The notes beneath the pieces were generated by a model. That model saw only the letters and a list, made by a program, of their open reading frames with translations. It ran no database searches and was not told where the DNA came from. 64,000 nucleotides of DNA from Anaeramoeba ignava BMAN. Its lineage: Eukaryota > Protista > Anaeramoebae. Every line of letters begins with the position of its first letter. Position 1 is the first letter of the stretch. Shown here one piece after another: positions 11,119-45,830 of this stretch. Where the stretch lies: assembly GCA_028826165.1 (NCBI GenBank), contig JAPDFW010000079.1, positions 310,001 to 374,000 of the forward strand, read 5' to 3'. The translations under genes and the position numbers were made by a program.

Positions 11119-11389
11119 TGAAAAAAAAAATTTAATAAAAAAAAAATGAAAAAAAAATTTTTTTGTTTTTTTATTTTTCATTTTTTTTTCTACTTTCATT
11201 TACTTTTTTTTAATTTTTCTCTTTTCATTCTTTCTTTTTTTTTTCTTTTATTTTTTATTTTCTTATTGTTTATTTGTGTGTTTTTCTTTTTTTAATTAAT
11301 TTTTCTTATTTGGATCTACTTTAATTAAACAAAAGTAAACAAAATGAAAATAATTACAAAAAAAATAATTAATTATTGATAGTTCCAAT

Positions 11390-13352: not shown

Positions 13353-13361
13353 TAGTTAAAA

Positions 13362-23302: not shown

Positions 23303-23669
23303 TTTCTGTTATTTTTTTTTTTAAAAAGAAAAAGAAAAAAATGAAAAAAAATCAAAATGAAAAAAAATTTAATTTTTTTAATTTTTAAATTCCACTTTTT
23401 TGATTTAATTAGAAAATTTTTTAAAATTAAAATTAAAATTAAAATTAAAAGGAAAAGAGTTTTTTTTTGATTATTTTTTATTCTTTTTGTTTTTTTGTTT
23501 TTTCCCATTAAAAAAAAGTAAAAAAAAAATAAACGGAATTGAAAAAAAAAAGAAAAATTGAATTGAATTGAAAAAAAAGTAAAAAAAAAAAGAAAAAAAA
23601 GAAGAATTGAAATGGGAAAAGAAAATTCCGTTCATTTTGAAATTGAAATTGAATTTGAAAATTCATAAT

Positions 23670-24062
23670 GATTTTGATTTTGATTTTGATTTTGATTTTG
23701 ATTTTGATTTTGATTTTGATTTTAATTTTGATTTTAATTTTGATTTTGATTTTGATTTTGATTTTAATTTTAATTTTGATTTTGATTTTGATTTTGATTT
23801 TGATTTTGATTTTGATTTTGATTTTGATTTTGATTTGATTTTTAATTTTGATTTTGATTTTAATTTTGATTTGGATTTTGATTTTGATTTTGATTTTGAT
23901 TTTGATTTAGATTTTGATTTTAATTTTGATTTTAATTTTAAATTTGATTTTGATTTTGATTTTGATTTTGATTTTAATTTTGATTTGGATTTTGATTTTG
24001 ATTTTGATTTTGATTTTGATTTTGAAATTGATTTTAATTTTAATTTTGAATTTTAATTTTAA
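23670..24062. repeat. (GATTTT)n repeat immediately 3' of the RNF213-like stop
   Basis: Directly visible. Confidence 0.9.
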
Positions 24063-24064
24063 TT

Positions 24065-27000
24065 TTAAAGTTGTTTCCTTTTATTGAAAATATATCGATA
24101 TGCTTCTCCTGTATATTTACTAGTTATTTCTTGCGGAAAATGATCTTTAATAATTCCACTTTCTCCTTCATATTGAAGTAATATTGAAATATTATGAAGA
24201 TATTCTTTTATTTTTTGATCTGTTTGAATTGTCCGAGTTTTTTCAATAAAAAGATTCTCAAATAAAAACTTCTCAAAAATAATAATCAATTTATCCAAAT
24301 CAATTTTCTGACAAAATAAATCTAAACTCTTTTCATATTCGGGTGGAATTTTTGATAAATAACTCTTATCAATTTTCTTAAGAATATTTTCCGAATACAT
24401 ATCAATATTATTCTTAATAAATCTTAAATGTTTGAGTTTTAATGAATGAATTAATGAAACATTTTCCAAACCAAGAATATCAATACCAAATTGATTTGCA
24501 AATACAAAAAGTGTTTGTTCTGGTAACAATGAATCAACTTTTTGAATGTTTGAACATAAATGGATAATATTTTCATAAAATAATTTGAAGTTTTTAATTG
24601 AGAATTTTTCAATAAGTTCATCAAGAATTTGATTCCATGTTTGCTGTGGAATATCCATTTGATTCCATCTTGAATCATTCAAAAATGAAATATCTAATAA
24701 AATCAAATCTGTAAATTGGAAATTACTCACAATAATTGAAATGTTATCTTTCTTGAAAAATGTAACCAATTTTTGTTTCAAAATCATTTCAAATTTCTCA
24801 AAATCGTTTTCTGGATAATAGAATTGCATGTATTCATTAATTTCCTTGAAATCAAAATTAAATGTTTCATCAATAGTTCTGTTATTAATATCAGATTTAT
24901 GGATTTTTATTGGAAATTTAATCATTTTCTCTTTTGGCTTTTTAATACCTTTTTGATTCAAAAATGTTTCATTGAAAATTTCTTTTAATTTCCGATATTC
25001 GTTGCAAATATAATTAACTAAATTATCAATATTTGGAGAATTATTAGGATATGAAAGAACTTTGATAATTGGTGAATCTTCTGAAATTAATTGGATTTTT
25101 TGTGATACTCTTTCTTCAATCTGATTTAATTGTGAGTCTTGTTTTATTTCAATAAAGTTTTTATTCAGCTGAGTAATTTCATCATTATTCATTTCACACA
25201 AACAAAGTTTCCAACATTCTTTAAATTCTTTTATCCAATTATCAATGTTTTCTTTCATTTCTTGTTTTTCTTCATTAATAATTTTAATGAAATCAGTAAT
25301 TTTGATTTGATTTGATTCTTGGAAACTGATTTTACTATTGTATTGGGAATTTATCAAACTAATAAATTTGAGAAAGGATGGTAATAAATCAATCATTTTG
25401 AATTTAATGAAATTATCCAAAAAGAATTGAGTAATTGGATATTTTTGGATGTTTTTAATGTTTGAAGGTTTCAAAAATTGAGATAATAATAAATTAGATG
25501 ATGGAGATATAAATAATAAATCTTTGAATTTAAATGATTCTCCAATTTTTTCAATATTAATTTGTTTAAGAATTTCTTCATGAGAATTAATATAAATATT
25601 TTGTAATAAATCTTCCCATTTCTGGAATTTATTCATTATAGTTCCATTATCAAGTTCATTTGTGTTTAAAGTGGAAATTTTTGATAAGAAAAGAATGTAA
25701 TAGAGTTTCGTATTTGATAATGTTAAATTAAGAAGGTTTGATAAATGTTTCATTTCATTATAAATTAAAATGGAAATATCTTCAATAATGTCTTTGCTTG
25801 AATCGTGATTTTTTTCAATAATATCCAATGTTTTCAATGAAAAATGAATAATTCTTGCAATTTTTGTTGGTATAATAAATTTAGTATCTCTTAAACTGAA
25901 CATTTGATTTGGTTCTTCATAATCAGAAATTCCAAAAATATTCTCATATAATTTTTCATTAGTTAAAAATCCAACATTTATTTCATTGAAAAGTGGAGAA
26001 GCAACATGTTTTGTTTTCAAATATTTTTCTCCTGTTTCAACAACTACAACAAATATTTTTTGGAAATTTTCTTTTATTATATCAACTTTGCTAAGAATAT
26101 AGTTAATAGTTTCTTTTATTTGATTTTGTTTCTCATTAAGATTTTGATTTTCGGTAAATGAGGAAGTTATTCTTGTAAGAACGAGATGCTTTTGGTCTTC
26201 TTTGATTTTTCCTTTCAAATATTCCAAACAAAATCCATAAAAAAATCCTTTTTTATCAAGAATTTCATTTTGTCTAAAAACTTGTAAAAATTTCTCTTCA
26301 AATTCTTTTTTAGATGAAGAAATTCTTTTTGATGCAAAAATATCATATTCTTGGAAAAATTGTTCAAGAACAATTTCTGAAACACCTTTAACTTTGTTCT
26401 TTTTGATGATCTTCTGGATTTTGAATAATATGATGAATATATTGAATTGAATTGCTATATTCTTGGAAAATATCATTTGTTTGATCAATTTCAGGATATA
26501 ATTTTGATTGTAAAAATAAGGAATGTGAATAAAAATCATTTTTTGTGTATTGGAAAAGAGCTTGTAAAAATGTAAAAGTTATCCATTCAATATTTTCTGA
26601 TGAAAATTTTAAATATTGTTTCAAATTATTGAAAATTGTTTTTCTAAAATCTAAATTGGATTTTGTAAATATCAATAAGTAATTAAAGAAAATTGTAAAT
26701 AAATTTTGGAATTTAAATGAATCATTCCCTTTTCCAAAAAAATTAAGTAATCTTTGATTTGGTTTGTTAGAATTTAAATTTTCGTTGATCTTATTGAAAA
26801 AATTAATAATTTGTTTGTCACTTTTTTGGAAAATTGAAATTTTAATCAAAATTTGGAAATAAATTTCAAAAAAATTAATTAATTCTTGATCAGAAATATC
26901 TTTTGTTTTGTTTTCATCCAAAAAGAAACTTAAGAACTCTTTTTTTGAAATTTCATTTTGAATACTTTTGAATTCTTGAGTTTGGGATATTTTTGATAAA

Positions 27001-30000
27001 TTTTTGGTTTTAGTTTGAAATAAAAAGTAAATATTAGACCATTTCTTAAATAATTCTGAAATAAAACGTTCGAATTTTGTGTAATTTGTTAATTGATTCA
27101 AAAAATCATAAATTTTATCAATACAAGTTCCAATAGGTATTAATTCATTTGGAGAATTATTCTTATTAAGTGAATTTTTAATAATTTCAAGTTGAGAATC
27201 AAAAAATCTATTCAATGAAAATTCTCCAAATTGATTTTTGTTTTGGTTTTGATTTTGATTAAATTCATTAACTAATTTGTAAATTGAAGAAATTTGTTGA
27301 AATATTTCCCAATTAATTTTTTGATAAATTTCTCTTAATGAAAACTTGGTTAATGAATTGATTTGTGATTCTTCAAAATGTAAAATGAATTTTTGGAAAT
27401 CTTGAATATAATCTTTGAAAAATTCTTTTTCAGATTCATTAAATGAAATTCCAATCAAATCATTCAAGAAATTTTTCAGATATTTTTCAGAAATATCTTT
27501 GCGTTTAGAAAAATTTTCTAGCCAATTTTCAATTGGTTCATCAACAATATCTTTCAAAATATCTTTGTTTTCTTGATGATAATCTTCTGTTATAACTTCA
27601 TAAAAATAATGGAAAAATGGGAATTCGGACTTATCAAATTGATCTTTCTGAATTTTATGATAAGGTTGAATTTCGATTAATTCAAAAATTTGTTTCCAAA
27701 AATTTTCCTTTTCTTTGCTTGTTGTTAAAATTAACTTGAAATTATCATTAACCATAATATAACTCAATAAAATTGCAAAAATTGTTTCCAACTTCTTAAT
27801 TAATTGAGAATAAAGATAAGAATTAAAAGATTCATAACTTTGTTGCATTCTTAATTTTTGTGTTATTAATTCTTGAATATCCCATTGATAAAAACTTATA
27901 TTTTCTTTTTTTCCTTTTTCAAACATAAATTTAAGTTTTGGGAAAATTAAATCTTTCAAAGTTTTCATTTTTTCTAAGAATGGTTTTGTGCTTTGGATTT
28001 TTTCAGGATTGATAAATTGAAGAATAGAAGAATTAAAAATTGGTTCAAATAATTTTTCCCATTCTTGATCCAAAATATTTTCAAGAAAATTTAAATCTGA
28101 ATCTTTTGATTCTGAAATGATTGGAAATTTGATTTCAGATGGTAAAATATCATCAATATAAAAATATTCCCAATTTTTTTCAAATGCAAAATGGAATTGA
28201 GTTTTGGATTGTTGAGTTGATGGAAGATGAACAATGAAAATTATCTTGCACTTAATTTCTTCTTTTTTAATTAAATTTTCAATCATATATTTCGATTGAT
28301 GGAATATTGTTTCAGGAGAAATTGATGTTGGAGTGAAACGAATTATCAAAGCAAAATTTTCATCTTTATAAGGATTCGTCTTCTTTATTGGTTCTAATCC
28401 AAGATTTTTTCTAACTTCTTTTTCAAATTGTGTATCATTTTCAATTTTAGAAAGTTCAATTTCTTTAAATTTAAAATTTTGAATTTGTTCAGATTTGATT
28501 GTTTGAGAAATTGATGAAGAAGTAAGAACAACTGAACATTGAATTTGTTTTGGAATTAATGTTGTTTGGATTAAATCATTCAAACTATCGTGATATAAAC
28601 TTAAATATCTTTGCCAAATATATCTTAAATATGAAATTTCTTTGATATTTTCGGTTGTATATTTTTTGATTGTTTTTAAATAAATTGAAAGCATTGATTC
28701 GTAATTGCAAATTCTCATCCACATATTTACTCCTTCAACTCTTAAATAATCTTCTTTTTCTTGTTTTTCTTTTTCAGAAAGTATTTGTTGGAGTTTTGTT
28801 ACTAAAGAAGGTAATAAATCAGTATGATATGAAACTAATAATTTCTCTTCTGTAATATCTGCAAATTTGCAAATGTTTTGGATAATTTCTTTTTGTTTCT
28901 GATAAAATCGAATAAATTCATTTTTGGTTATAAATTCTTCTGATATAAGTAAATATTTTTCAAATCTATTCAAAATTGCTGGTGATTCAACATTATAAGC
29001 TCTTGATTTATCAGAAATTACTATTAATCTAAATTTAGGATCAATTTTGATTTTGGAAACAATATTTCCAAATGAAATTTTGGCAAAAATTTCATTTTCT
29101 TTTTTTGAATAATTTTGATTTAATAAATCATATAAAGGTTCATATAATTGTTCATTCTTAAATAAGATTACTATTTCTCCATTACGAATTGAATCTTCAA
29201 TTGATTGTAAATTACGAATAATTCGAGTTTGCTTTTTGTTTTCAGCAAAATCTGATCCAAAAAATAATTTGTAATCTGTTTTAGTACTTAATTGTTCAAT
29301 TTCTTTTAGAATAAATGATAAATTGCATATTTTATCAGTCAAAATCATCATATGCCGAGAATAATTTGGAGTATCATTTGTATCTTCAAAACCAAATTCT
29401 TGAAAAATTCTTCTGTTTATATTTTGGTAAATTAGTTCTCGTGTTGTAATTTTTTTATCGCTAATCAAAGGAACATTCTTTGGAAATTTGGGGAATAACT
29501 CTTCAATAAAATCAGGTTTTGAACTGAAATTTCTTAATAAAGCATTTAAAATTAATCCAGGATTATTGTATGAAATTCCATGTTTAATATTGCAATATCC
29601 AATCATTTTTAAGAAATAATAAAAATCTCTCAATCCAAAATAAGGTCTTGATTTACTTTTTGGATCTTTTCCTTGTTCTTTCACAATTTTCTTGTAAATT
29701 TTAGTAAGATAATTTGCAAATATTTCAGGAATCGTTGAATTCATTCCAACTGATTTTTGTGCATAAAATTTGTTGAGATGTTGCGCCTAATTGTGTTATA
29801 GATTCTCTTCTAAGAAGAATTCCTCGGTTTGTATTACTTGGATCTAAAACCCAATTAGAAATTGCAACAACTGAAACTCCTCCATTTTCTTTAATTATAT
29901 CTTGAATTTTTTTGTTATCTTGATTAATTCTTGAAATTTCTTTTTCTGATTCTTCAAGTTGAGAATGAAGTGCTTTTAATGGCAAATCTGGACTTAATTC

Positions 30001-33000
30001 TGCAAGTGCAACTTCATCAAGAATAACAACTCCTAAATCATTTTTCTTTGTTTTTGATTTTGCAATTTTAAAAACATCTTCAATTCCTTGAGTTGTTGTT
30101 ATTGGTGAACATTGAAGGAAAGATTCTCTAAGTGTTCTAAGTTCAAGTTTTTTTGCAAAGTTATTTATTTCATGAGGAGGTTTCAAAGATTCCATTATAA
30201 CTTCAACAGAAATTGATTTTGATGTTCCTTTTTTTGATTATAATAATAAAAATTGAATAAAAATTAAATTAATATATTTATAAAAAAGAAAGAAAAAGAT
30301 GTTATTTTACCTGGTTTTCCAATAATAAATAATGGAATTTGTGCATAAACACAAACAAAAATCAATAAACAATTCTCCTTCAAAGGTATGTTTTTTGCAA
30401 TCATTTTTTTTGAAAAATCATAATCTTCTAATGATTCAATTAATTTTTCTTGTGAATTTTCAATTACGTTTTTGCAGTTTCCTAATAAATTATTATTTCT
30501 TTCAAAAATTGCTTCAAAATATTGATCTTTGCTTGTTGTTTGTCGACTTGCATAACAAATGAATAAAGATAAGTAAATTGCTTTCTGAAAAAGATCTTCT
30601 TCTTCTTCTTGTTCATTTTCTTTTTCTGATAATAAAAATATACCAGCTTTAGATTCAACAAGCCATTGAAATACTCGAAGAATTCTTGAAACATCTCGAA
30701 GTGAAATTAAAGCTGCTAAATTCCTTTTGAAATCATCATTTGTTTGATTTGAATCTCCATCTTGACGAATATAACTATGAGATTTGGAAATATATTCTTT
30801 GAATGATGATATAATTGTTTGATATTCTCTGAATTTTTCATCGTTGTTGTTTAAAATTGAGTAAAAAGTATTATCAACCATTTTAGAAATGTATACTTGT
30901 TCTTGTGCTGAGTTTAATGATTCAAAACTAAGAACACTATTTTCTAATGAATTTGGAATTTTATGAACTCGATAAACAGCATTTCTAATTTCTTCTTGTT
31001 CTTTATTCTTTTTATCTCCATAATCAAAAAGTAATCCACAAACCTTTTCTTCTTTATTTTGATTTTCATTATTTTGATTTTCATTATTTTGATTTTCATT
31101 ATTTTGATTTTCAGAAATTGCTTTGGATTTTCTTTCTCTATATGGATTAATTGCTGCAATAAATTTAATGTTTGATGGTATTTTTTTGCCTTCAAATAAT
31201 CGATCAATAAACAAATATTTGAAAATAGGAATACAATATTTGGGTGCAGTATTCAATTCATCAAAAAATAAAACAACTTGATTTTGTTTTCCAATTTTTA
31301 GATTTTTCAAGTAATTTCTTAATTTTTTCTTTTGTTGTTCCTCCATTTACATTAAATGTAATGAAATGATTTGTTTCTTTTTCTTTTTCTTTTTCATTTA
31401 ATTCTTCTTCTGAGTTGAATTTACTAAATTGATAATTTAAAATATCTCGAAATAAATATTCAATTAATGCAGTTTTTCCACATCCAGTTTCTCCACTTAT
31501 AATTAATGAAAATCCAGTAAACATTCTAAATTGAATGAACATCATTTTGGAAAGATTATCAAATGTAAGAACATATTTTCCTTTTCTTGTATCAATTCCA
31601 TTCGAAAAAATTTCTTCAGACTTATTTGGATTCAGAAAGTTAAAAAATTCTGAAATTTGTTTATATTCTCTTTCAGAATTACTTAAGTTATTTGAAATTG
31701 GATCTCCAAATCTCCCCTGAGAAATTGAATATAAATTTCCTTCAAAATCAAGGAAGTTATCTGGAAAATTTGTGTTCATAAATAATCCAACTTCTTTCGT
31801 TGAACCAGAAATATTTGGATTATGAATTGAAACTGGATTCCCATTTTCAAATTCTAAATTAAGAATGAACGAATAAAAATTATCAAAAGTTTTCCCTTGT
31901 TTTGAAAAAAAGGAAATTAGATTTAATCTAGCAACAGAAAATATCCAACATCTAATAATTTCTTGTCTTCTTAAAAATGGGTTTTGATTAAGATTTTGAT
32001 TTTTATTTTGATTAGAATTTTGATTTTGATCAGAAATTTCCCAATCAAGAATTGGATTGATAAATTTTTTTAATGAATTCCAAAATTGATAAAATAATCT
32101 AAAAGATTTATGGAAATTGTGATCAGGATTTAATTGTTCTGAAATGATTTGTATGATGTGTTGAGATTTATTGAAAAATGAGTTTGTATCAGGATTTTGT
32201 GATGATAATTCTTGTTTCCAATTATCAAAATCTTTGAAATTATTGAATAAAGTGTTATTTTGAGTTTCAATTAGAAGATTTGCAACTTTTTTCAAATCAT
32301 TATCATCAATTTCTTGAATTTTTTTTTGATCTTCATCAACTTCATACATTTTGAATTTAATTTCATTTACAGAACATGAACATTCTTGTGGTTGAAATTT
32401 TTGAAGTGGATAAAAATATTTCCAAATATTATTTTGACTTGGAATTTCAAAAAAAAGTTTTGCATTTGGAGGTAAAGTCCAACAAATATTATAAGGATCT
32501 TTTGCTTGTCTATCTTCAATAGAACCCCACATTGATAATTGCCAAAGAGAATCTGTCATTTGTAATGAACATTCAGTTGGAAATTCAATATGAATAAATA
32601 ATTCTTCATTTTCGTTTTTCTTTTCTATTGGGATTTTATTCAATTCAACAATCAATTCTTGTATTTCTCCTGTTGTAAGTTGAATAAGATAATATTTGTA
32701 ATCAATTTTATCATTTTGAGAATTACAAAATTTTCTAATTTGATAACTTTTTCCATCTCCTTCATTTTGTGAATAAAAAACCTTGAAATGATGGAAAAAT
32801 GTTGATTTTTGAATAATTTTATTGAGAATTTTATCATTTTCTAAGTTAATAATCAATTTTCCTTCTTGTAATTGACTCATTAAAAATGCATTTTGTTCTC
32901 CTTCCAAAACAAAAATAGTTAATGGGAAATGTGTTGTGAAATTAATTGATCTTATTTGAGAAATAACTTCATTTTGGCATGTTTGGGATAATAATGTTGC

Positions 33001-36000
33001 ATTTATAATAGAAAAAATAACCTTTTCTTCTTCTTTTTGTTTTTGTTTTTTAAAATTAGAATATTCTTCGTTATAATACTTATAAATTGAGAAAAAATTC
33101 TTCACATCTCCCACATTTGTATTTGAATCACAAAAAAGAACTTGTTCTCTTTGTGGCAAATAATTTGAATATAAATAATAAATCATGGTAACTTCATTGT
33201 GAATAAATGAATCTGTTTCACTTCTTTAATAAATATTTTTGGATTTGATATGTTTCCATCCCTTTTGTTAATTTGTTTGATAAGTTCATTGCTCAAGTTT
33301 GTTCTAGATTTTATTTTGATTTTTTTTAAAGAATTTTTAATTTTTGACCAAGTAAAATTATTTTTGATTAAATTGAAAAATCCTGTAGAAGAATTTTTCC
33401 AATTATCACTTTGTTGGCTAATAATACTGTTTAAAATTTCTTGTGGATCAGATCTTCCTTTTCCAAAAATTAATTTTAAGATTGGATAAATCACTTTGTT
33501 TTTTTCTTGAATATTTAATAAAGGAGTTGAAACTAAAAGTAATTGATTTGTTGATAAAATTCCTGATAATTTCTCTTTTGAAATATTTTTACTATCTTCT
33601 TCCCAATTTTTTAAAGCTTGGTTGATATTTTGTTTCAATTCTTCCATTTTTTCTGAATAAGTATTATCATCTTCTTTGATTTCAATTTCTTTGTTAATTC
33701 CTGGAATTTGTTTATAATACTTTATTGGAATAAACTTTTCTAAATATGTATTAATTGATTGAATTGTTTCAAAAAGAATTTCAAATTGTCTAAAGAAGAA
33801 TGAATATTCTTTATCTTCAGTTGGATTCTCATTAATTGCTCGATTTTGACTTTTATTCTTTTTGTTTAAAGCAACTCTCCACATACTTATGAAATCTTCA
33901 AAATTAAGTATTTCTTTTTCTTGTTTAATTTGGCATTGAAAAATTGGTTCTTCAAGTCTAAAAATAATTTTGGATCCGTTTTTGAAAATTTTTTCAATTT
34001 TATCACTTAAAGTATCTGATAATTCTTTAATATTTTGTTCTTTGAATAAAGGGAAGTTTTTGACTAATAATTTGAGATTAATTTTTTTTATATTTTCCTC
34101 CATTTCTTTTTGAATTTTTGAGATTTTTTCTGTTACTGAATCAAAATTTTGAAATGTTTTTGTAAAGAAAGGATTGAAAATATCAATAAAATTAATTAGA
34201 TATTTCTTTGTTTGATTTAAATCATCATCATTAGTTATATCTTGATTTTGGATGTTTGTTTTTAAATTATCAATAGTTTTTTCTTTTAATTCTTCTTTTA
34301 TCCATTCAATTATTGTTTGATCTTTTTCATCTTGATTAGGAAATAAATCATTTATCAAATCAAGTATTTGAATATTAACTTTCAAAGTTTTTTCAATACT
34401 TTGTTTTAAATTTGTAATTTCAGAAAGTTTATTTTGTTGCCAATTTTGTTCCAAATTTTTAATATTTGATAATTCTTTATCATCTTTGTTTTGAATAAAA
34501 ATTTCACAAAATTTAATAAAAGGATTAATTCTATTGATTATTTTCCTAAATTCAAAAAATTCTTGAATTCTGTTTTTTTGTATTTCTTTGGTTATGAATT
34601 GCTTTTTTTCAGATTTATTTTGTTCGTTATATGTTTGAAATTCTGTATAATCTTTATCAAGATATTCTTCTTTTGCTATTGGAAATTCAGTGTTTATATA
34701 TTCTAAATTTGGATCTTTGTTTAAATTTTCTATCCATTTTTCCCATTCAATTTTTACGTCACTTAAAATTTTACCAATACTTAAATCTTTATTTTCTTGA
34801 GATTCAATATTTTTTGTTAATTTTTCTTTATATAAAAAACTTATAGAATATAAAATAATGCTAAACCAAAGTATCTTCTTCTTTCTTTAATGTTTCAATG
34901 AATTGTTTGAATTGATCGATTGTAATTTCCATTGTGTTGATTTTTTCCCAATTTGGAAATTTTTCTTTAATCTTCTTTTCATCAAATTTGAGAAATAAAT
35001 CTTTTATTGGAGAAAATTCTTTCAATAAGTTTTGAGTAAATTTTTTTGTTTTTTTGGATTGTTGTTCTAGAAATTTTTTTTCCAGAATTCTCTTTTCCAG
35101 AATTCTTTTTTCCAGAATTCTCTTTTCCAGTATAATTTTTGAACAAAGGAAATAATACTTTCAAATTCTTTTCATTGTCTTGAAAGTTCTTCAAATTATT
35201 TATTGTAGCTTGTTTTGGATTTTGTAATTTGATAAAATAATTGTAGATTTCTTCTTGATATTTTTCCAATTTTTCTTTAAGATCATGAGCCAAATTAATT
35301 TCATTTGAATTTGGGTTTTTTGGATATAATAAATTGTTTTTAGGATTTGAATTATTGAATTGCAAAAATATGATAATTATATTCATCCATCTTTTTGGTA
35401 AACCTTCTTTATTTTTGATAATTTCATTAAAAGGACTGTCTTCTAATTTTTTTCTTTCATTCAGCAAATGTTCGCTCCAACTTTCTAATTGAATTTTTAT
35501 TGGAAGAAATCTTAAAAATTGCTTTTTTGAAACATTTTGGAAATCATATGTTAAATCCAACAAATAGAATTCTTTTGCTTTTTCATCTAATTTATCAAAA
35601 AATTCTAATCTTTCATCGTTGTTTTTGATTTGTTTATTGCTGTATTCATGATAACTTTTATCTTCGAAAATTGTAATTAAATCAGATAATTTTTCAATAT
35701 AAGTTCTTTTTTCATTTTTCAAACAGGGTTGATTAAAAAGGGAATGACCAGCAATATCAGGCAATATACTTGCTATTTGCATAATAGCACTTCTTAGATT
35801 TCTGATTTTCCTCATTTCTGCACTGTTAGCGAAATTGTACAAATTCACCCAAAATTGAAAGCATTCCAATAAATTAGGGAAAATTGTATTTTTCAAGTTA
35901 TCCTGGAAATTTGGAATTAAAAAGAGATTTATCATCAATTCTTTTTTTTGAATTGTGTTAATAAAATTGAACCAAATTGTGTTTTGAAAATTTAATGATT

Positions 36001-36805
36001 TGCCAAAAATATCGATTAAAACTGGTTTTGAAAGTTCAGAAAGTTTGAAGTGATACTTTGCATAAAAAGAAAAGAGAATTCCAAGATCTTTTTGTTGAAT
36101 ACTATTTGGATTTGTGAATTCCTTTTTGAAAGTAATGAAAAGAGGAAGAAAAATGATTTTTTTTGATTCTTTGTAATTTTGATTTAATTCAGAAAGAAAA
36201 TTAGTGAGAATATTAAAAGCATCAGGATCTTCTTTTGTTTGATAAAATTGGATGATTTGCTTATTGCATTTAATTAAATCATCTTTTTTGCTTTCTTTGA
36301 AAATTTTCTTCAGAGTTGATTTACTGTATCTTAATCCAAGAACAAAAAGAATTTTGGCAATATTTTCTGGTTTTGATTTGAAAGTAACTTTTGAACTTTG
36401 TTTTGTTTCGAATCTTTTTTTTGAGAAGGCATTCAAAAAATCTGTGAAAATAATTAGTTGGTCTTTTTTCAATATTTTTTTTTCACTTGGAGATGAATAA
36501 TCAATAACTGCATCAATAACTCTTGTTCCATATTTTTTTGAATCTTTTTCATCGAAATCAAAAATAATCTTTGATTCTTTAATGTCAATTTGTGTGAATT
36601 CTTTTTTTTTTTCTTTTTTATTTTCGAGATACAATCTGTAACTTGGTTTTTCTTGTTCTAAAATTGGGAATTGAAAAATGTAAACATGATTTGATTCAAA
36701 ATCTTGTCCAATTTCTTTTGTTTCTTGATTTGAATCTTGGTATTGAAGTTTTGGTTTTCCTTTTTTAATTGTAATTAATGTAACTGGTATTTGGTTTTGT
36801 GTCAT
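24065..36805 (-). CDS. RNF213-like: RNF213/mysterin-like giant multi-AAA+ ATPase (~4,200 codons); one intron (30310-30228) and six reading-frame shifts
   Basis: Collinear RNF213-type motifs: SQNEGDGKS, ISGETGCGKT, VVLFFDELNT, IAAINPYR, VYRVHKIP, ISLRDVSR, LKENCLLIFVC..IPLFIIGKPG|TSKS, QCSP, VVILDEVALAELSPDLPLKALH, ISNWVLDP..NRG, YFGLRDFY, LYDLLNQNY, LNRFEK. The 34981-34455 gap in the ORF track is also coding in shifted frames. Confidence 0.9.
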
Positions 36806-37109: not shown

Positions 37110-38835
37110 ATTTAAAATTGATATAAAATTAGTTTAAAATTGATTTAAAATTGATATAAAATTGATATAAAATTGATATAAAATTGATATAAAATTGATA
37201 TAAAATTGATATAAAATTGATATAAAATTGATATAAAATTGATTTAAAATTGATTTAAAATTGATATAAGATTGATTTATAATTGATATAAAATTGATTT
37301 AAAATTGATATATAATTGATTTAAAATTGATTTAAAATTGATATAAAATTGATTTAAAATTGATATAAAATTGATATAAAATTGATTTAAAATTAATTTA
37401 AAATTGATATAAAATTCATTTAAAATTGATATAAAATTAATTTAAAATTAATATAGAATTGATATAAAATTGATATAAAATTGATATAAAATTCATTTAA
37501 AATTGATATAAAATTAATTTAAAATTAATATAGAATTGATATAAAATTAATTTAAAATTAATATAAAATTGATTTAAAATTGATTTAAAATTAATATAAA
37601 ATTGATTTAAAATTGATTTAAAATTGATTTAAAATTGATATAAAATTGATTTAAAATTGATTTAAAATTGATTTAAAATTGATATAAAATTGATATAAAA
37701 TTGATATAAAATTGATTTAAAATTGATTTAAAATTAATATAAAATTGATATAAAATTGATTTAAAATTGATTTAAAATTGATTTAAAATTAATATAAAAT
37801 TGATATAAAATTGATATAAAATTGATATAAAATTGATTTAAAATTGATATAAAATTGATTTAAAATTGATTTAAAATTGATATAAAATTGATATAAAATT
37901 GATATAAAATTGATATAAAATTGATATAAAATTGATTTAAAATTGATATAAAATTGATATAAAATTGATATAAAATTGATTTAAAATTGATATAAAATTG
38001 ATATAAAATTGATATAAAATTGATTTAAAATTGATTTAAAATTGATATAAAATTGATTTAAAATTGATATAAAATTGATATAAAATTGATATAAAATTGA
38101 TATTTGGGGAAATTGATATAAAATTGATTTAAAATTGATATAAAATTGATTTAAAATTGATATAAAATTGATTTAAAATTGATATAAAATTGATTTAAAA
38201 TTAATATAAAATTGATATAAAATTGATATAAAATTAATATAAAATTGATATAAAATTGATTTAAAATTGATATAAAATTGATTTAAAATTGATATAAAAT
38301 TAATTTAAAATTGATATAAAATTGATATAAAATTGATATAAAATTGATATAAAATTGATTTAAAATTGATATATAAAATTGATATAAAATTGATATAAAA
38401 TTGATTTAAAATTGATTTAAAATTGATATAAAATTAATATAAAATTAATATAAAATTGATATAAAATTGATTTAAAATTGATATAAAATTAATTTAAAAT
38501 TAATATAGAATTGATTTAAAATTAATTTAAAATTAATATAAAATTGATATAAAATTGATATAAAATTGATATAAAATTAATATAAAATTGATATAAAATT
38601 GATATAAAATTGATATAAAATTGATTTAAAATTGATTTAAAATTGATATAAAATTGATATAAAATTGATATAAAATTGATATAAAATTGATTTAAAATTG
38701 ATATAAAATTGATATAAAATTGATATAAAATTAATATAAGATTGATTTATAATTGATATAAAATTAATATAAAATTGATTTGAAATTGATTTAAAATTGA
38801 TTTAAAATTGATTTAAAATTGATTTGAAATTGATT
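37110..38835. repeat. Intergenic 11-bp array, same family and orientation as 20290-22535
   Basis: About 155 units; one interruption (TTTGGGGA) at ~38103. Confidence 0.93.
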
Positions 38836-39554: not shown

Positions 39555-40134
39555 TTTGTAATTTTCTGTTTTTTTTATTTTTAATTTTTTTTTGAATAAG
39601 TGAATAATTAAATTAAATAAAGTAAAAAGTGGAATTTATATTTAAAATTGAAAAAAAAATTTTTCTTTTTTGATCTCCTTTTTTATTATTTTTTTTTTTC
39701 TAAATTTTTTTTTTATAAATCAAAACAAATTTGAAAAAGAAAGAAAAATTAAAATTTTTCAAACATTTTCCATAAATTTCTACTCTTTTTTTTATATTTA
39801 TATAAAAATATAAAAATAGATAATTGTGGAAATCCAAATTGTTTTATAAATAAAAAAAAATTTTTTTGATTTAAAAAATAAATAAAAAGAAAAGAGAGAG
39901 AAAGAAAGAGAATCAATTCATTTTTAAAAGCTAATAATTTAAATCAAATCAAATCAAATCAAATTAAATTAACTTTATGTTTATGTTTGTTTTATGTTTT
40001 TTTTTTGAGCTGTTTAAAGTTATTTTAAAAAATAAAATTACGTTTTAAGTTTAAAAAGTTTCAAATAAAAATAAAAGAATAAGAGATCAAAAAAGAATAA
40101 AAAGAAAAAAAATGATTTAAGAAAAAAATTTTTT

Positions 40135-41260
40135 TCTTAATTAATTTTAAATAATAAATAATCAAATAATTAAATTTATTTTATATATTTTATAATTATT
40201 TATTAATTCAAAATTAAAATTTAAATTAAAATAAATTATTAAAATATTAATTAAAATATTAATAAATAAAATATAAATTTTCTTAATTAATTTTAAATAA
40301 TAAATAATCAAATAATTAAATTTATTTTATATATTTAATAATTAATTATTAATTCAAAATTAAAATTTAAATTTAAATTAATTATTAAAAATTAATTAAA
40401 ATATTAATAAATAAAATATAAATTTTTAATTAGTTTTAAATAATAAATAATTAATGAATTAAATTTATTTTATATATTTTATAATTAATTATTAATTCAA
40501 AATTAAAATTTAAATTTAAAATAAATTATTAAAAATTAATTAAAATATTAATAAATAAAATATAAATTTTCTTAATTAGTTTTAAATAATAAATAATCAA
40601 TTAATTAAATTTATTTTATATATTTAATAATTAATTATTAATTCAAAATTAAAATTTAAATTAAAATAAATTATTAAAAATTAATTAAAATATTAATTAA
40701 ATAAAATATAAATTTTTAATTAGTTTTTAAATAATAAATAATCAATTAATTAAATTTATTTTATATATTTTATAATTAATTATTAATTCAAAATTAAAAT
40801 TTAAATTTAAATAAATTATTAAAAATTAATTAAAATATTAATAAATAAAATATAAATTTTTAATTAATTTTAAATAATAAATAATCAAATAATTAAATTT
40901 ATTTTATATATTTTATAATTATTTATTAATTCAAAATTAAAATTTAAATTTAAATAAATTATTAAAAATTAATTAAAATATTAATAAATAAAATATAAAT
41001 TTTTAATTAATTTTAAATAATAAATAATCAAATAATTAAATTTATTTTATATATTTTATAATTAATTATTAATTCAAAATTTAAAATTTAAATTAAAATA
41101 AATTATTAAAAAATTAATTAAAATATTAATAAATAAAATATAAATTTTTAATTAGTTTTTAAATAATAAATAATCAAATAAGTTAAAGATATTTTATTTT
41201 TCGGAAATAATTTTTATTTTATTTTTGCAAATTTAATTTAAATTAAAATAAATTATTAAA
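40135..41260. repeat. ~143-146 bp AT-rich satellite A, left arm (~8 units)
   Basis: The marker AATTCAAAATT has its C at 40209, 40355, 40498, 40644, 40789, 40932 and 41075. Confidence 0.9.
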
Positions 41261-41499
41261 AAGTCGCAGACGAGTGGATAATTGATTAAATTAAATAAAA
41301 AAAAAAAAATTTTTTTAAAAAACAAAATAAAATATCTCAAATAATAAAAATAAATTTTTTTCAAATCCATTTTAAGATTATTTTTGAGGAAAAATGAGAA
41401 TTCTTTGAAATTTGATATTTTAAAAATTATTAAAAATTGAGGGAAAAATTAAGGAATAAATAAAATATAAATTTTTAATTAATTTTAAATAATAAATAA

Positions 41500-41698
41500 T
41501 TATTATTAATTATTATTTTATTATTATTATTATTATTATTTATTAAATTATTATTTAAATTTAATTTTATTAATTATTATTATTAAATTATTATTAAAAT
41601 TATTATTAAATAAAATATAATTTTTATTATTATTATTATTTATTATTATTATAATTAAATAATTAAATTATTATTATTATTATTATTATTTTATTATA

Positions 41699-41733
<35 letters not shown>

Positions 41734-41824
41734 ATTAAATTATAAATTATTATTAAAATTATTAAATTATTATTAAATTAAAATTATTATTTTTATAATT
41801 TATTTTTAAATTATTAAATAATTA

Positions 41825-41914
<90 letters not shown>

Positions 41915-41945
41915 AATATTAATTAAAATATTATTATTATTAAAA
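41500..41945. repeat. Imperfect (TTA)n microsatellite
   Basis: Directly visible. Confidence 0.85.
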
Positions 41946-43409
41946 TATAAATTTTTATTAATTTTAAAATAATAAATAATCAATGAATTAAATTTATTTT
42001 ATTTCAAAATTAAAAGATCATTGTTTTGAAAAACAAAATATAAAAAAATTTAAAAAAAATTAAAATTTTAATTAATGTCAAAAATAAAAAAATAGAAAAA
42101 CGAAGAATTTTAAAAAAAAAATAAACCAGAAAACAATTAAATTTAAAGAAGAGAACCATCAGAAAAAATTAATTCTTGATAATTGAAACTATAAAAAGAA
42201 AATATTCAGGAAAAAGTTTTAAAACCTATTCCTCAAATCTAATGAATTTATTTTATATTTTCAGATATCTCCAAAATTGAAGTTAATTCACAAAATTGAA
42301 AATGATACTGGAAGATCCTTCAAAAATATGGAATCAACAATTCCTTTAAATAGAAAACAAAAAAATTTTCAATAAGTTGTCAATTGATATTCCTAAACAT
42401 TTTACCGTTTTGGTTTTATTCTCTCTTGGGAAACATCTGCCTAAGGTCAGAAAATTAAAATGATTAAATTAGAACAACTCAAGTTAAAATGACAATGGGA
42501 TGAAATATATTGTTTACTCACAAGGCGAGTCAAAAACAATCACGTGATTTATGGAAACCCAAATTGGAAACCCAAAACAGCTAATTATTCCAAAATGAAG
42601 ATCCAAAAGATCTACCAATTAATACTTTTAATAATTAATCATTAATTTACAATGAAATTTCGTTTTTAGAGCAATTAAACATCGAAATTTTAAAAATGCC
42701 AATACACAAAGGAGCGATACATCCAAAAACATTGGGAGATTGTTAAAGATTTGCCAAGTTTTAGGAATTAATATAATGTAATTAAATTCTTTGCATAATT
42801 AATTATTAATTCAAAAACCAAAAGTTTCCATAAATTAAAAAAAAATTGATTAAAAATTACATGAAAATATCTCAATAAAAAAAATGATAAATTTTTAATT
42901 AGTTTTTAAACAAATACCAATTTCAAATAATGATAAATTTATTTTATATCCAATTTTATAATTTTATTAATTCAAAATTAAAATTTAATTTAAATTAATT
43001 TATTAAAAATTAAATATTTAATAAAAAAAAGATAAATTTTAATGAATCATTTGAAGGATCAAAATGAAAAAGAAACCAACAACAATGAAAATTTATTTTC
43101 GGAATATATTTTATATTTATTTCCAATTTTTCAAAATCCAAAATTTTACTTTTTCAATCATTTTTGATTTTTAAAATAAATCCATCATTAAAAACAAATT
43201 CATCAATTTTTCATTTCATTAAAAAATAAAATATAAATTTTTAATTTAAATTTTAAAAAATAAATAAAGAAAAAAGAAAAATGAATTCAAATATATTTTA
43301 AACTGGATATTTTACAAAATTAAAATAAATTTTTAAATTAAATTTTCAATTTTAATTAAAATATTTTAAGGGAAAAATTTATTTTACTTTTTAGTTTTTT
43401 TTCATTTTC

Positions 43410-44549: not shown

Positions 44550-45830
44550 ATGAATATATTAACACTTGCCAAAATATGTGAATTTGCAGGAGGATCTGAA
44601 GTTTCCGAAATCACAAATTTGAATGCTAAATCAAAAGAAATTGAAGATATAGAAGATATAAAACGTTGCCGGAAGTTGAACAAAATTGATCTAGCAAATA
44701 ATAATTTAAAATCTATAAAAAAATTAAAAGACAATATTGAGCTAAGATGGATTTCAATATCAAACAACAAAATCAAGCAAATCAAAGAAAAGGATATGAA
44801 AGATTTCGACAAACTAGTTGTTTTTAATGCAAGTGGGAATAAGCTCAAGGATTTATCGTTTCTAAAAAATAAACCTCAACTTAAAGCTTTAATTGTCAAT
44901 AACAATAAGATCAAAGAATTGGGTCCAAATATCTCAACTTTGAAATCATTAAACACCTTGATTCTTTCACACAATTTCTTGGAATCACTCAAGAATGTTA
45001 ATTCTTTGATTCAATTAACCAAACTCTCTGTTAGTCACAATAAAATTAGAGAATTTCCAAACGTCTTTTCTTTATTTTCTTTAAAAGAATTAAGATTGAA
45101 TAACAATTATATTTCAAAAATACCTTCAAATTTATCTAAAAATCAACAATTACAAATTTTGGATTTGGGAAAGAATTTTATTCAAGATTTGAAGGAATTG
45201 GAAAATTTGAAAAGTTTGAAAAATTTGAAAAATTTAAATTTAGCTGAAAATCCTGTTTGTAAATTGGAAAATTATCGAGAGAAAGTTTTGGAGTTACTTC
45301 CAGATTTATTGATTTTGGATGGGATTCGTGTTAAACCAAAGAGAGGAAAAAAGAAGGAAAGAAATAAGAGAAAATCAAAAAAAAGAAAAAATCCAAATCC
45401 AACTTCAAATTTAGATTCAAAATTAGATTCAGATTTAAATTCAAATTCAAATTCAAATTCAAATTTAGATTCAAATTCAAATTCAAATTCAAAATTAAAT
45501 TTAGATTCAAATTTAAATTTAGATTCAAAATCAAAATCAAATTCAAATTCAAATTCAGATTCAAAATTAAATTCAAATTCAAAATTAAATTCAAATTCAA
45601 ATTTAGATTCAAATTTAAATTTAGATTCAAATGATTCTGAATTTGAAAAAAATTTTTTCCAAAAAAAAAAAAAAAAAAATCTTCAACAAGAAATTCATAA
45701 TGAAAAAGATATTAAAATTGTTATAAATAAAAAACAAAAAAGAAAAAAACCAAAAAAAAAATTCAATTCAATTCATTTACAAAAAGAAAGAGAAGAAATT
45801 GGATTTGGAGAAAAATCAAAATGGAATTAA
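44550..45830 (+). CDS. SDS22-type leucine-rich repeat protein with LRRcap and K/S/N-rich tail
   Basis: Repeated LxxLxLxxNxI motifs; cap LAENPVCKLENYREKVLELLPDLLILDG; basic tail ending GFGEKSKWN. Confidence 0.9.
   Translation: MNILTLAKICEFAGGSEVSEITNLNAKSKEIEDIEDIKRCRKLNKIDLANNNLKSIKKLKDNIELRWISISNNKIKQIKEKDMKDFDKLVVFNASGNKLKDLSFLKNKPQLKALIVNNNKIKELGPNISTLKSLNTLILSHNFLESLKNVNSLIQLTKLSVSHNKIREFPNVFSLFSLKELRLNNNYISKIPSNLSKNQQLQILDLGKNFIQDLKELENLKSLKNLKNLNLAENPVCKLENYREKVLELLPDLLILDGIRVKPKRGKKKERNKRKSKKRKNPNPTSNLDSKLDSDLNSNSNSNSNLDSNSNSNSKLNLDSNLNLDSKSKSNSNSNSDSKLNSNSKLNSNSNLDSNLNLDSNDSEFEKNFFQKKKKKNLQQEIHNEKDIKIVINKKQKRKKPKKKFNSIHLQKEREEIGFGEKSKWN

What the first reader, a model, noticed from the sequence alone, without database searches (positions are those of the whole stretch)
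24065..36805. RNF213/mysterin-like giant AAA+ protein in a protist, apparently lacking RING and RZ zinc fingers
Seen: the RNF213-type AAA motif series, including Walker A GETGCGKT and GKPGTSKS and Walker B FFDE and ILDE, plus a CTD-like end (LKLKHL...HFPQEIT). No Cys/His cluster resembling a RING or RZ finger appears in the ~1,900 aa after the AAA core. Established: animal RNF213 coats intracellular bacteria and ubiquitylates LPS via its RZ finger. Inference: this may be a ligase-less or differently armed member of an ancient cell-autonomous microbe-sensing family, relevant if the host engulfs or houses bacteria.
Basis: partly seen in the sequence, partly recalled or inferred. Interest (0 to 1): 0.8.

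Follow-up and report, generated by a model that had tools for sequence, protein, structure and literature searches.

The report
RNF213-like giant without ligase zinc fingers
This 12.7-kb gene of the anaerobic amoeba Anaeramoeba ignava is a true relative of the human antibacterial giant RNF213 that keeps its ATP motor motifs but has lost the zinc finger used to attach ubiquitin. It is one young, fast-evolving copy in a large gene family, and six single-site frameshifts make it unclear whether this copy still works.

Summary
Window 36805..24065 (minus strand) encodes about 4,200 codons collinear with RNF213, from the AAA3 Walker A to the C-terminal domain. PDB hits are to RNF213 only (E 1e-14 to 1e-24). 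A profile of the last 779 codons matches human RNF213 from the RZ position to the C-terminus (E 2e-24).

The AAA3 and AAA4 Walker A/B motifs are intact. No RING or RZ finger exists in any frame. RZ-bearing paralogues in the same genome pass the same tests, so the loss is derived. It is shared by a well-supported clade.

The organism is Anaeramoeba ignava. At least 35 RNF213-like loci exist; this scan has already reported the family on other pieces of this genome.

This copy belongs to a subfamily of about 8 copies (80-95% identical). It has one GT-AG intron and six private frameshift indels but no nonsense codon (14.8 expected if neutral, P=2e-7). dN/dS is above 1 in the N-arm and E3-core/CTD and below 1 elsewhere. 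Contigs of an independent run lack two of the frameshifts.

It is therefore a recently functional, diversifying, ligase-finger-less RNF213 paralogue. Whether it is intact or freshly broken is unresolved. RING absence is normal outside some animals.

The parts
24065..36805 (-). Whole RNF213-like gene, about 4,210 codons when the eight in-frame segments are summed. It has one intron and six frameshift sites.
   Evidence: ORF and frame maps; segment lengths.
33220..36805 (-). N-terminal arm/linker region (segments e1, e1b, e2), about 700 aa shorter than in vertebrates. Codons 600-1050 (34980-33166) show dN/dS of 2.7-5.
   Evidence: No Pfam or CBM20 hit. Homology to paralogue C70 residues 296-899. 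Sliding dN/dS.
31471..31494 (-). AAA3 Walker A, GETGCGKT.
   Evidence: It aligns to RNF213 residues 2432-2473 of chain 9g08.
31257..31271 (-). AAA3 Walker B, LFFDE.
   Evidence: alignment to human ILFFDEAN; coordinates.
30228..30310 (-). The only spliceosomal intron (GT..AG, 83 nt). It splits the AAA4 Walker A motif GKPG|TSKS.
   Evidence: Non-3n indels among the paralogues are tolerated here.
30013..30027 (-). AAA4 Walker B, VILDE.
   Evidence: alignment to human VVVLDEVGLAE; coordinates.
28140..29663 (-). AAA5-AAA6 and the start of the hinge.
   Evidence: E 1.9e-24; segment e6 residues 31-538 align to Alligator RNF213 residues 2993-3491.
26405..28139 (-). Hinge, E3-back and E3-shell equivalent. 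It is about 350 aa shorter than in vertebrates and has no RING. No sequence-level match to RNF213 was found.
25982..26122 (-). Place where the RZ finger sits in paralogues and in human RNF213. Here the segment (..IFVVVVETGEKYLKTKHVASPLFNE..) has no Cys or His at any ligand or nucleophile position.
   Evidence: Alignment with RZ-bearing paralogues. PF20173 absent. Profile-to-human alignment.
24068..25981 (-). E3-core after the RZ position plus the C-terminal domain, including LKLKHL and HFPQEIT.
   Evidence: Profile A1 against human RNF213 4542-5235 (of 5247), E 2e-24. The AF2 model's top 8 Foldseek hits are all RNF213.
35022..35022 (-). Frameshift 1: a +1 nt insertion private to this copy.
   Evidence: A contig of run X4 lacks the extra base. 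No other assembled copy is more than 95% alike over that stretch.
34870..34870 (-). Frameshift 2: a +1 nt insertion private to this copy.
   Evidence: An X4 contig with 0 mismatches lacks the extra base, while X1 and X2 contigs (depth 37.8 and 3.5) carry it. The next best assembled copy is 96% alike.
33218..33219 (-). Frameshift 3: a -1 nt deletion private to this copy.
   Evidence: All X1 and X2 contigs carry the extra base, but paralogue C60 is identical over that stretch, so the contigs cannot be assigned to this locus.
31298..31299 (-). Frameshift 4: a -2 nt deletion private to this copy.
   Evidence: The read evidence is ambiguous.
29758..29758 (-). Frameshift 5: a +1 nt insertion private to this copy.
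26404..26404 (-). Frameshift 6: a +1 nt insertion private to this copy.
   Evidence: The site lies outside the stretch given to read laying.
23669..24066 (.). (TGATTT)x66 microsatellite directly 3' of the stop codon. It is part of the roughly 14-kb duplicated unit.
37113..38800 (.). An 11-mer (TAAAATTGATA) x153 array 5' of the gene. It is part of the duplicated unit.

Best explanation
This is a paralogue of the RNF213/mysterin family in Anaeramoeba ignava. It keeps the dynein-like AAA ring with catalytic-type Walker A/B motifs in AAA3 and AAA4, and it keeps the RNF213-specific E3-core and C-terminal domain. It has lost the whole RZ finger, which carries the ubiquitin-transfer cysteine, and like most non-vertebrate relatives it has no RING.

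The loss is derived. It is shared by a monophyletic clade made of this subfamily plus the C64b/C66 and C93a-c copies.

The copy sits in a subfamily of about 8 members produced by recent ~14-kb duplications and evolving by birth and death. Some members are clear pseudogenes. This copy and its twin on contig C60 have been kept open by selection while their N-arm and E3-core/CTD surfaces diversify.

Inferred mechanism (not shown): an ATP-switched scaffold that can still bind and coat a target or pair with other proteins, but cannot carry out RZ-type transthiolation itself. It would then be a non-catalytic sensor, adaptor or coat subunit, possibly working with RZ-bearing paralogues. Whether this individual copy is intact or freshly broken is open: the frameshifts may be Nanopore assembly errors, an intact allele may exist, or the breaks may be real.
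For: Identity:
- RNF213 is the only significant PDB hit for four separate segments.
- The segments are collinear with vertebrate, sponge, cnidarian and Naegleria RNF213-like proteins.
- The C-terminal profile matches human RNF213 from the RZ position to the end, E 2e-24.
- The top 8 Foldseek hits are all RNF213 (E 2e-7); the next hit has E 1.

Motifs: AAA3 and AAA4 Walker A/B are intact.

Finger loss:
- PF20173 is absent here but scores 4e-17 and 1e-12 in paralogues C70 and C46.
- The RZ segment of C70 matches the human RZ at 8e-11.
- The alignment shows no ligand residue in this clade.
- No pattern appears in any frame.
- The RZ-less clade has 100/100 support.

Selection:
- The window lineage has 45 synonymous, 177 non-synonymous and 0 nonsense changes, against 14.8 nonsense expected under neutrality, P 2e-7.
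- There are about 18 in-frame versus about 11 frameshifting indels against C60.
- dN/dS is 0.4-0.6 in some regions and above 2.7 in others.

Family: 56 matches at 35 or more loci.

Organism: NCBI proteins of Anaeramoeba ignava are 89-92% identical.

Frameshift doubt:
- X4 contigs that can only come from this locus lack two of the extra bases.
- The assembly is Nanopore R9 with only two Pilon rounds (PMC11550330).
Against: - Six frameshifts stand in the public assembly. At 34870, DNA contigs of the assembly's own sample agree with the assembly.
- Sister copies C64, C44, C143, C100 and C35 have real stop codons, so decay is common in this subfamily.
- Overall dN/dS is about 0.95, which alone would fit neutrality.
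- In the decayed copies, frameshifts outnumber stops 3-10 to 1, so 6 frameshifts with 0 stops is not impossible for a very young pseudogene.
- Transcription is not shown: no holder run is on record as RNA.
- No biochemical or localisation data exist.
- The hinge/E3-back/E3-shell part has no detectable sequence match to RNF213.
Confidence: 0.6

Rival explanations
1. The copy is a freshly dead pseudogene. All six frameshifts are real, nothing full-length is made, and the selection signals date from before inactivation.
For: - The assembly carries six private 1-2 nt indels.
- X1 and X2 DNA contigs carry the extra base at 34870.
- Sister copies carry stop codons and large deletions.
- No annotated NCBI protein of 428-1363 aa matches the last segment at 100%.
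Against: - There are no nonsense codons where 14.8 are expected.
- In-frame indels are in excess.
- dN/dS is regionally heterogeneous.
- Contigs of an independent run, attributable only to this locus, lack two of the indels.
- The Nanopore R9 assembly was lightly polished, and reads can be captured by identical paralogues, as around 33219.
Confidence: 0.38
2. It is still a ubiquitin ligase that uses another catalytic centre, for example another cysteine in the E3-core such as the CWKLCLC patch at 25222-25193, or direct E2 recruitment.
For: - The E3-core/CTD scaffold is retained.
- A Cys at position 617 of the last segment is nearly invariant in all 13 paralogues.
Against: - The conserved Cys 617 is not a Cys in human RNF213.
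- The segment where the finger would sit holds one Cys in 228 residues.
- No known E2-binding RING is present.
- No precedent was found in the papers read.
Confidence: 0.08
3. The frame changes are programmed ribosomal frameshifts. Five of the six act as +1 shifts.
Against: - Each site is a private indel absent from the in-frame paralogues.
- Each paralogue has its own different sites.
- There is no shared slippery motif.
- Other family members have uninterrupted ORFs of up to 4,182 codons.
Confidence: 0.02
4. It is a midasin- or dynein-type AAA+ protein and not an RNF213 relative.
For: There is a weak Pfam AAA_7 (dynein P-loop) hit at E 2.5e-4, below the gathering score.
Against: Every significant PDB, database and fold hit is RNF213, including the RNF213-specific E3-core and CTD.
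Confidence: 0.01

Closest known systems
Human/mouse RNF213 (mysterin); PDB 8s24, 9g08, 6tax, 7oik
   Same: - The order of AAA3, AAA4, AAA5/6, hinge, E3-core and CTD is collinear.
- The AAA3 and AAA4 Walker A/B motifs are nearly identical (GETGxGKT, FFDE, GKPGxSKS, (V/I)LDE).
- The C-terminal domain motif is shared (HFPQEI here, QFPEEI in human).
   Different: - It has no RZ finger, so neither the zinc ligands nor the nucleophile Cys (human C4516; residue numbers from my own knowledge and the alignment).
- It has no RING.
- The N-arm is about 700 aa shorter and no CBM20 was detected.
- The hinge-to-RZ stretch is about 350 aa shorter.
- It is one of dozens of paralogues rather than a single gene.
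RZ-bearing Anaeramoeba ignava paralogues (C70:179954-192499, a 4,182-codon ORF; C46 = NCBI M0811_04787, named 'RZ-type domain-containing protein' in UniProt)
   Same: - Same genome and same architecture.
- 25-47% identity from the N-arm to AAA6.
- The E3-core after the finger is conserved.
- No canonical RING was seen in C70 either.
   Different: They keep a canonical RZ finger (PF20173 at 4e-17 and 1e-12). They group with Naegleria and animals in the C-terminal tree, apart from the window's clade.
Degenerate-RZ paralogues of the same genome (C60:390-393k, C127, C63, C1, C126)
   Same: They group with the window's RZ-less clade in one 99/98-supported group of the C-terminal tree. None gives a PF20173 hit.
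   Different: They still show C-x3-H ... C-x2-C remnants of the zinc scaffold but not the central Cys. The window's clade has nothing left.
Naegleria gruberi NAEGRDRAFT_79490 and invertebrate 'RNF213-like' proteins (sponges, molluscs, echinoderms)
   Same: They are full-length relatives outside vertebrates, and most lack RING Pfam hits. Some, from Asterias and Mya, also have no precomputed PF20173 hit.
   Different: Most keep the RZ finger. None was detectable with the window's last segment alone in 1.84 billion representatives.

Membership tests
RNF213/mysterin family | Dynein-like AAA core with sequence homology to RNF213 AAA3-AAA6 | tested here: met
   PDB phmmer E 1.2e-4, 2.5e-20, 4e-14 and 1.9e-24, with RNF213 the only significant target. 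Collinear with Alligator RNF213 residues 2444-3491.
RNF213/mysterin family | Walker A and Walker B motifs in the two active units, AAA3 and AAA4 | tested here: met
   GETGCGKT and LFFDE; GKPG|TSKS and VILDE. They align to the human motifs.
RNF213/mysterin family | RNF213-specific E3-core and C-terminal domain | tested here: met
   Profile A1 against human residues 4542-5235 (of 5247), E 2e-24. The top 8 Foldseek hits are RNF213 at prob 1.00. Model pLDDT is 80-90 in the C-terminal half but below 50 around the RZ position.
RNF213/mysterin family | RZ finger (Pfam PF20173) with zinc ligands and the transthiolation Cys | tested here: not met
   No PF20173 hit at E up to 1. The positive controls, paralogues C70 and C46, hit at 4e-17 and 1e-12. 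There is no Cys or His at the aligned positions and no pattern in any frame.
RNF213/mysterin family | RING (C4HC3) inserted in E3-back | tested here: not met
   No RING Pfam hit. No window of 40 aa holds 5 or more Cys/His. No RING pattern in three frames. RING Pfam hits among relatives are largely confined to vertebrates, cnidarians and amphioxus.
RNF213/mysterin family | Hinge, E3-back and E3-shell scaffold between AAA6 and the RZ position | tested here: inconclusive
   A stretch of about 580 codons lies in the right place, but neither the window's segment nor paralogue C70 gave a sequence match. It was not folded.
RNF213/mysterin family | N-arm with a CBM20 carbohydrate-binding domain (PMC11549300) | tested here: inconclusive
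   No Pfam hit in the first 1,190 codons. The N-terminal part is about 700 aa shorter than in vertebrates. It was not folded.
RNF213/mysterin family | E3 ligase and ATPase activity | not testable with these tools
   Biochemistry is needed.
Dynein / midasin AAA+ proteins | Best sequence and fold matches to dynein heavy chain or midasin | tested here: not met
   Only a sub-threshold AAA_7 hit. A dynein chain ranks 37th in Foldseek with E 7.
Processed or decayed pseudogene | Frame-disrupting mutations that are real in the organism's DNA, with neutral evolution | tested here: inconclusive
   There are six frameshifts in the assembly. Against decay: 0 nonsense codons versus 14.8 expected and two indels absent from an independent run. 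For decay: DNA contigs support the indel at 34870.

The most novel reading that the evidence does not exclude
The RZ-less, N-arm-diversifying RNF213 paralogues act as sensor subunits. They recognise varying bacterial (prey or symbiont) or membrane surfaces. Through ATP-dependent co-assembly they recruit RZ-bearing 'executor' paralogues. This would be a sensor/helper network like that of plant NLRs, built from RNF213 giants in a protist that houses bacteria in a symbiosome.
Probability: 0.1. Interest if true: 0.85.

Novelty: new variant of a known kind. Interest (0 to 1): 0.5.

Why it matters
RNF213 is described in the literature as a vertebrate immune ligase and Moyamoya disease factor ('expressed in all vertebrates', PMC7311170). 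No paper in the searched library links it to Anaeramoeba.

Here a symbiont-hosting anaerobic protist carries dozens of RNF213-like genes. One clade of them has discarded the only known catalytic centre while keeping the ATP motor motifs. Its members stay open under selection and diversify on the N-arm, the part that is also under positive selection in primates (PMC11549300).

That points to a finger-independent job for the RNF213 scaffold. A candidate is ATP-dependent coating, which in mammals does not need the RZ finger on Toxoplasma vacuoles (PMC11549300). It also points to immune-receptor-like birth-and-death evolution of this family deep in eukaryotes.

For this single locus the value is lower. 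It is one of many copies and may be broken. At least one paralogue is already labelled 'e3 ubiquitin-protein ligase rnf213' in the public annotation.

Tried and rejected
- **Last segment alone.** The last 837 codons gave no PDB hit by single-sequence phmmer. Only the 13-paralogue profile did.
- **C70 hinge-to-RZ stretch.** Paralogue C70's hinge-to-RZ stretch (901 aa) gave no PDB hit. The RING-equivalent place therefore could not be aligned to human RNF213. RING absence rests on the lack of any Cys/His cluster.
- **Read laying.** All runs are kept as short contigs, and paralogues are locally identical.
  - Three of the five sites covered (33219, 31299, 29758) could not be assigned to this locus.
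  - No joint across the intron was seen, so splicing and transcription are not shown.
- **Word search with the last segment.** It found only two A. ignava proteins.
- **Full HMMER search of 1.84 billion representatives.** It found 8 proteins, all from A. ignava. None came from outside the species, A. flamelloides included. With such fast divergence this is weak evidence about the age of the clade.
- **Rfam on the window.** It found nothing.
- **Programmed frameshifting.** I rejected this because the sites are not conserved among paralogues.
- **Hidden finger in another frame.** I rejected this. The only Cys-rich out-of-frame string, at 26138, comes from a Val-codon run and contains stops.
- **Joined model.** Every search used single stop-free segments by reference.
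- **Not done.** I did not use the second structure job, on the hinge/E3-back part or the N-arm, because only about four diverse sequences were at hand. I also did not use complex prediction.
Full report
**What is there**

The minus strand from 36805 (ATG) to 24065 (stop) holds eight long stop-free segments in changing frames. One junction is a clean 83-nt GT..AG intron (30310-30228) that splits GKPG|TSKS.

The other six junctions are not introns. They are 1-2 nt indels at about 35022 (+1), 34870 (+1), 33219 (-1), 31299 (-2), 29758 (+1) and 26404 (+1). Summed, the segments give about 4,210 codons.

Every search used one stop-free segment by reference.

**Identity**

Four separate segments hit RNF213, and nothing else significant, among all PDB chains:

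| Part | E-value |
|---|---|
| AAA3 Walker A | 1.2e-4 |
| AAA3 to AAA4 | 2.5e-20 |
| AAA4 | 4e-14 |
| AAA5/6 to hinge | 1.9e-24 |

- GETGCGKT and LFFDE in AAA3.
- GKPGTSKS and VILDE in AAA4.

The last 837 codons gave no hit alone. A profile of this segment with 12 paralogues matched human RNF213 from the RZ position to the C-terminus (residues 4542-5235 of 5247, E 2e-24).

An AlphaFold2 model of the segment has mean pLDDT 66, rising to 80-90 in the C-terminal half. It found only RNF213 structures (top 8 hits, E 2e-7 to 4e-5; the next hit has E 1). Midasin and dynein are excluded.

**Organism**

The closest database proteins are 'hypothetical protein M0811_... [Anaeramoeba ignava]' at 89-92% identity. 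This confirms earlier notes of this scan. It also fits the 80.65% A+T reported for the BMAN genome (PMC11550330).

**The zinc fingers**

Four tests agree that this gene has no finger:
- No segment has a Cys/His cluster.
- No RZ- or RING-like pattern exists in any of the three frames of the gene strand.
- Pfam gives neither PF20173 nor any RING family at E up to 1.
- Between the start of the last segment and the conserved post-finger helix (SLRDTKFIIPTKIARIIHFSL, 25897-25835) there is a single Cys.

The same tests are positive in paralogues:
- The 4,182-codon uninterrupted ORF at C70:179954-192499 carries a textbook RZ finger.
- That finger matches the human RZ at E 8e-11 and PF20173 at 4e-17. 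Paralogue C46 scores 1e-12.
- A search with this RZ region finds 24 places in the genome, but not the window's locus or its close copies.

An alignment across the finger shows three states:
- Intact: C70 and C46.
- Zinc scaffold remnants without the central Cys: C60:390k, C127, C63 and C1.
- Nothing left: the window, C124, C64b, C66 and C93a-c.

In a maximum-likelihood tree of the C-terminal region, the 'nothing left' group is monophyletic (100/100). It groups with the degenerate group (99/98). The intact copies group with Naegleria and animals (midpoint root, long branches). The RZ absence is therefore a derived loss.

The RING is a different matter. Paralogue C70 has no canonical RING either. 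Among 515 database relatives, RING Pfam hits are largely confined to vertebrates, cnidarians and amphioxus. A missing RING is therefore the ordinary state.

**Family and subfamily**

The AAA5/6 segment finds 56 matches at 35 or more distinct loci in the 42.8-Mb genome, and this is a lower bound. Earlier follow-ups of this scan put the family at 48-75 loci.

The window's gene belongs to a young subfamily:

| Copy | Relation to the window's gene |
|---|---|
| C60:736-749k | 94% identical over 14 kb, flanking microsatellites included |
| C44 | 95%, cut by a contig end |
| C64:397-410k | 91%, C-terminal third deleted |
| C35, C143, C124, C100 | Partly decayed, with many stop codons |

Each copy has its own private frameshifts.

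**Is this copy alive?**

*Evidence that it was functional until very recently*

On the window's own lineage (polarised with C60 and C64/C44) there are 45 synonymous, 177 non-synonymous and 0 nonsense changes. With the observed mutation spectrum, 14.8 nonsense changes are expected under neutrality (P 2e-7). C60 shows 0 against 7.3 expected.

Against C60 there are about 18 in-frame indels and about 11 frameshifting ones.

dN/dS is about 0.95 overall but heterogeneous:
- 0.4-0.6 in the first 450 codons and from AAA5 to E3-back.
- 2.7-5 in codons 600-1050 of the N-arm (34980-33166).
- 2-4 in the E3-core/CTD.

A pseudogene would be uniform near 1. Other RZ-less members (C64b/C66, C93a-c) show the same pattern: ORFs of more than 1,000 codons stay open with dN/dS of 0.9-1.3.

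*Evidence on the frameshifts themselves*

- The assembly is Nanopore R9 corrected with Racon and Nanopolish, followed by two Pilon rounds (PMC11550330).
- Contigs of run X4 come from another sample and study, and its kind is not on record. They lack the extra base at 35023 and at 34868 with 2 and 0 other differences. No other assembled copy is more than 96% alike over those stretches. The contigs therefore come from this locus or from an unassembled allele.
- At 33215 all X1 and X2 contigs carry the in-frame version. C60 is identical over that stretch, so this says nothing about the window's copy.
- At 34868, X1 and X2 DNA contigs of the assembly's own sample agree with the frameshift (depth 37.8 and 3.5).
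- The decayed sister copies show 3-10 frameshifts per stop. Six frameshifts with no stop is therefore possible for a very young pseudogene.

I put about 0.6 on an intact gene or an intact allele, and about 0.4 on a freshly broken copy. Transcription is not shown: no holder run is on record as RNA, and no contig bridges the intron.

**How it probably works (inference)**

With the AAA3/AAA4 sites intact, the ATP-driven switch of the ring is probably kept. ATP binding to the AAA core activates the E3 function in mammals (PMC12075652 abstract). With no RZ Cys and no RING, the protein cannot perform the known RNF213 ubiquitin transfer.

In mammals, RNF213 coats on Toxoplasma vacuoles need the ATPase but not the RZ finger (PMC11549300). 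A finger-independent coating or scaffolding role therefore has a precedent.

Diversifying selection on the N-arm mirrors the primate pattern (PMC11549300). It suggests that this part contacts a variable ligand.

**Comparison and novelty**

By sequence and fold the gene is a member of the RNF213 family. It fails the two features that make RNF213 a ligase.

RNF213-like proteins of protists and invertebrates are already in public databases. Examples are Naegleria NAEGRDRAFT_79490 and an A. ignava fragment already named 'e3 ubiquitin-protein ligase rnf213'. I found no paper on them: six papers mention RNF213 and Dictyostelium only in passing, none holds both RNF213 and Anaeramoeba, and the Anaeramoeba genome paper never mentions ubiquitin.

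The last segment has no relative outside A. ignava detectable by phmmer in 1.84 billion representatives.

This scan has already described the family on other pieces of this genome. What this locus adds is an RZ-less clade with intact ATPase motifs, its birth-and-death dynamics, and the selection pattern.

Noticed in passing
window 44550-45830 (+), 46001-48565 (-), 53336-55590 (-): Within 20 kb of the RNF213-like gene lie three other genes. They are an LRR protein (LRR_4, 6e-19), a SPRY-domain protein in a stretch of unusually high G+C (38% against about 20%), and an ankyrin + BTB gene (Ank_2 4e-20, BTB 3e-13). These are recognition or ubiquitin-adaptor type families.
   Followed up: partly
window 23669-24066 and 37113-38800: The gene is bracketed by a (TGATTT)x66 array and an 11-mer x153 array. 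Both are included in the roughly 14-kb unit duplicated on contig C60. Such arrays might mediate the duplications.
   Followed up: partly
G000:C70:179954-192499 (L011, L014, L015): This is an uninterrupted 4,182-codon ORF, with a possible 556-codon upstream exon, encoding an RZ-bearing RNF213-like paralogue. A second Cys-rich patch (C-x18-C-x-CC-x10-H) lies about 400 aa upstream of the RZ finger and is not a canonical RING.
   Followed up: partly
G000:C64:397000-410000 (L020, L021): This subfamily copy has lost about 3.4 kb (window equivalent 27525-24077), that is the E3 module and CTD. It also carries three in-frame stops, so it is a clear pseudogene.
   Followed up: yes
window 10001-14000, 40001-42000 and 58001-60000: These are intergenic stretches with only 2-7% G+C, extreme even for this genome.
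   Followed up: no
public annotation of A. ignava (P0001, P0002, P0123-P0131): The giant RNF213-like genes are annotated as many short 'hypothetical proteins' of 96 to 1,289 aa. This suggests that frameshifts or introns fragment the gene models across the family.
   Followed up: partly
Read-laying table 3, window 32236-32784: High-depth X1 and X2 contigs carry a mix of C60-type (32272, 32388) and C64-type (32698) variants, and no contig with the window's own letters was laid there. Either the contigs collapse paralogues or the assembly differs from the short reads.
   Followed up: no
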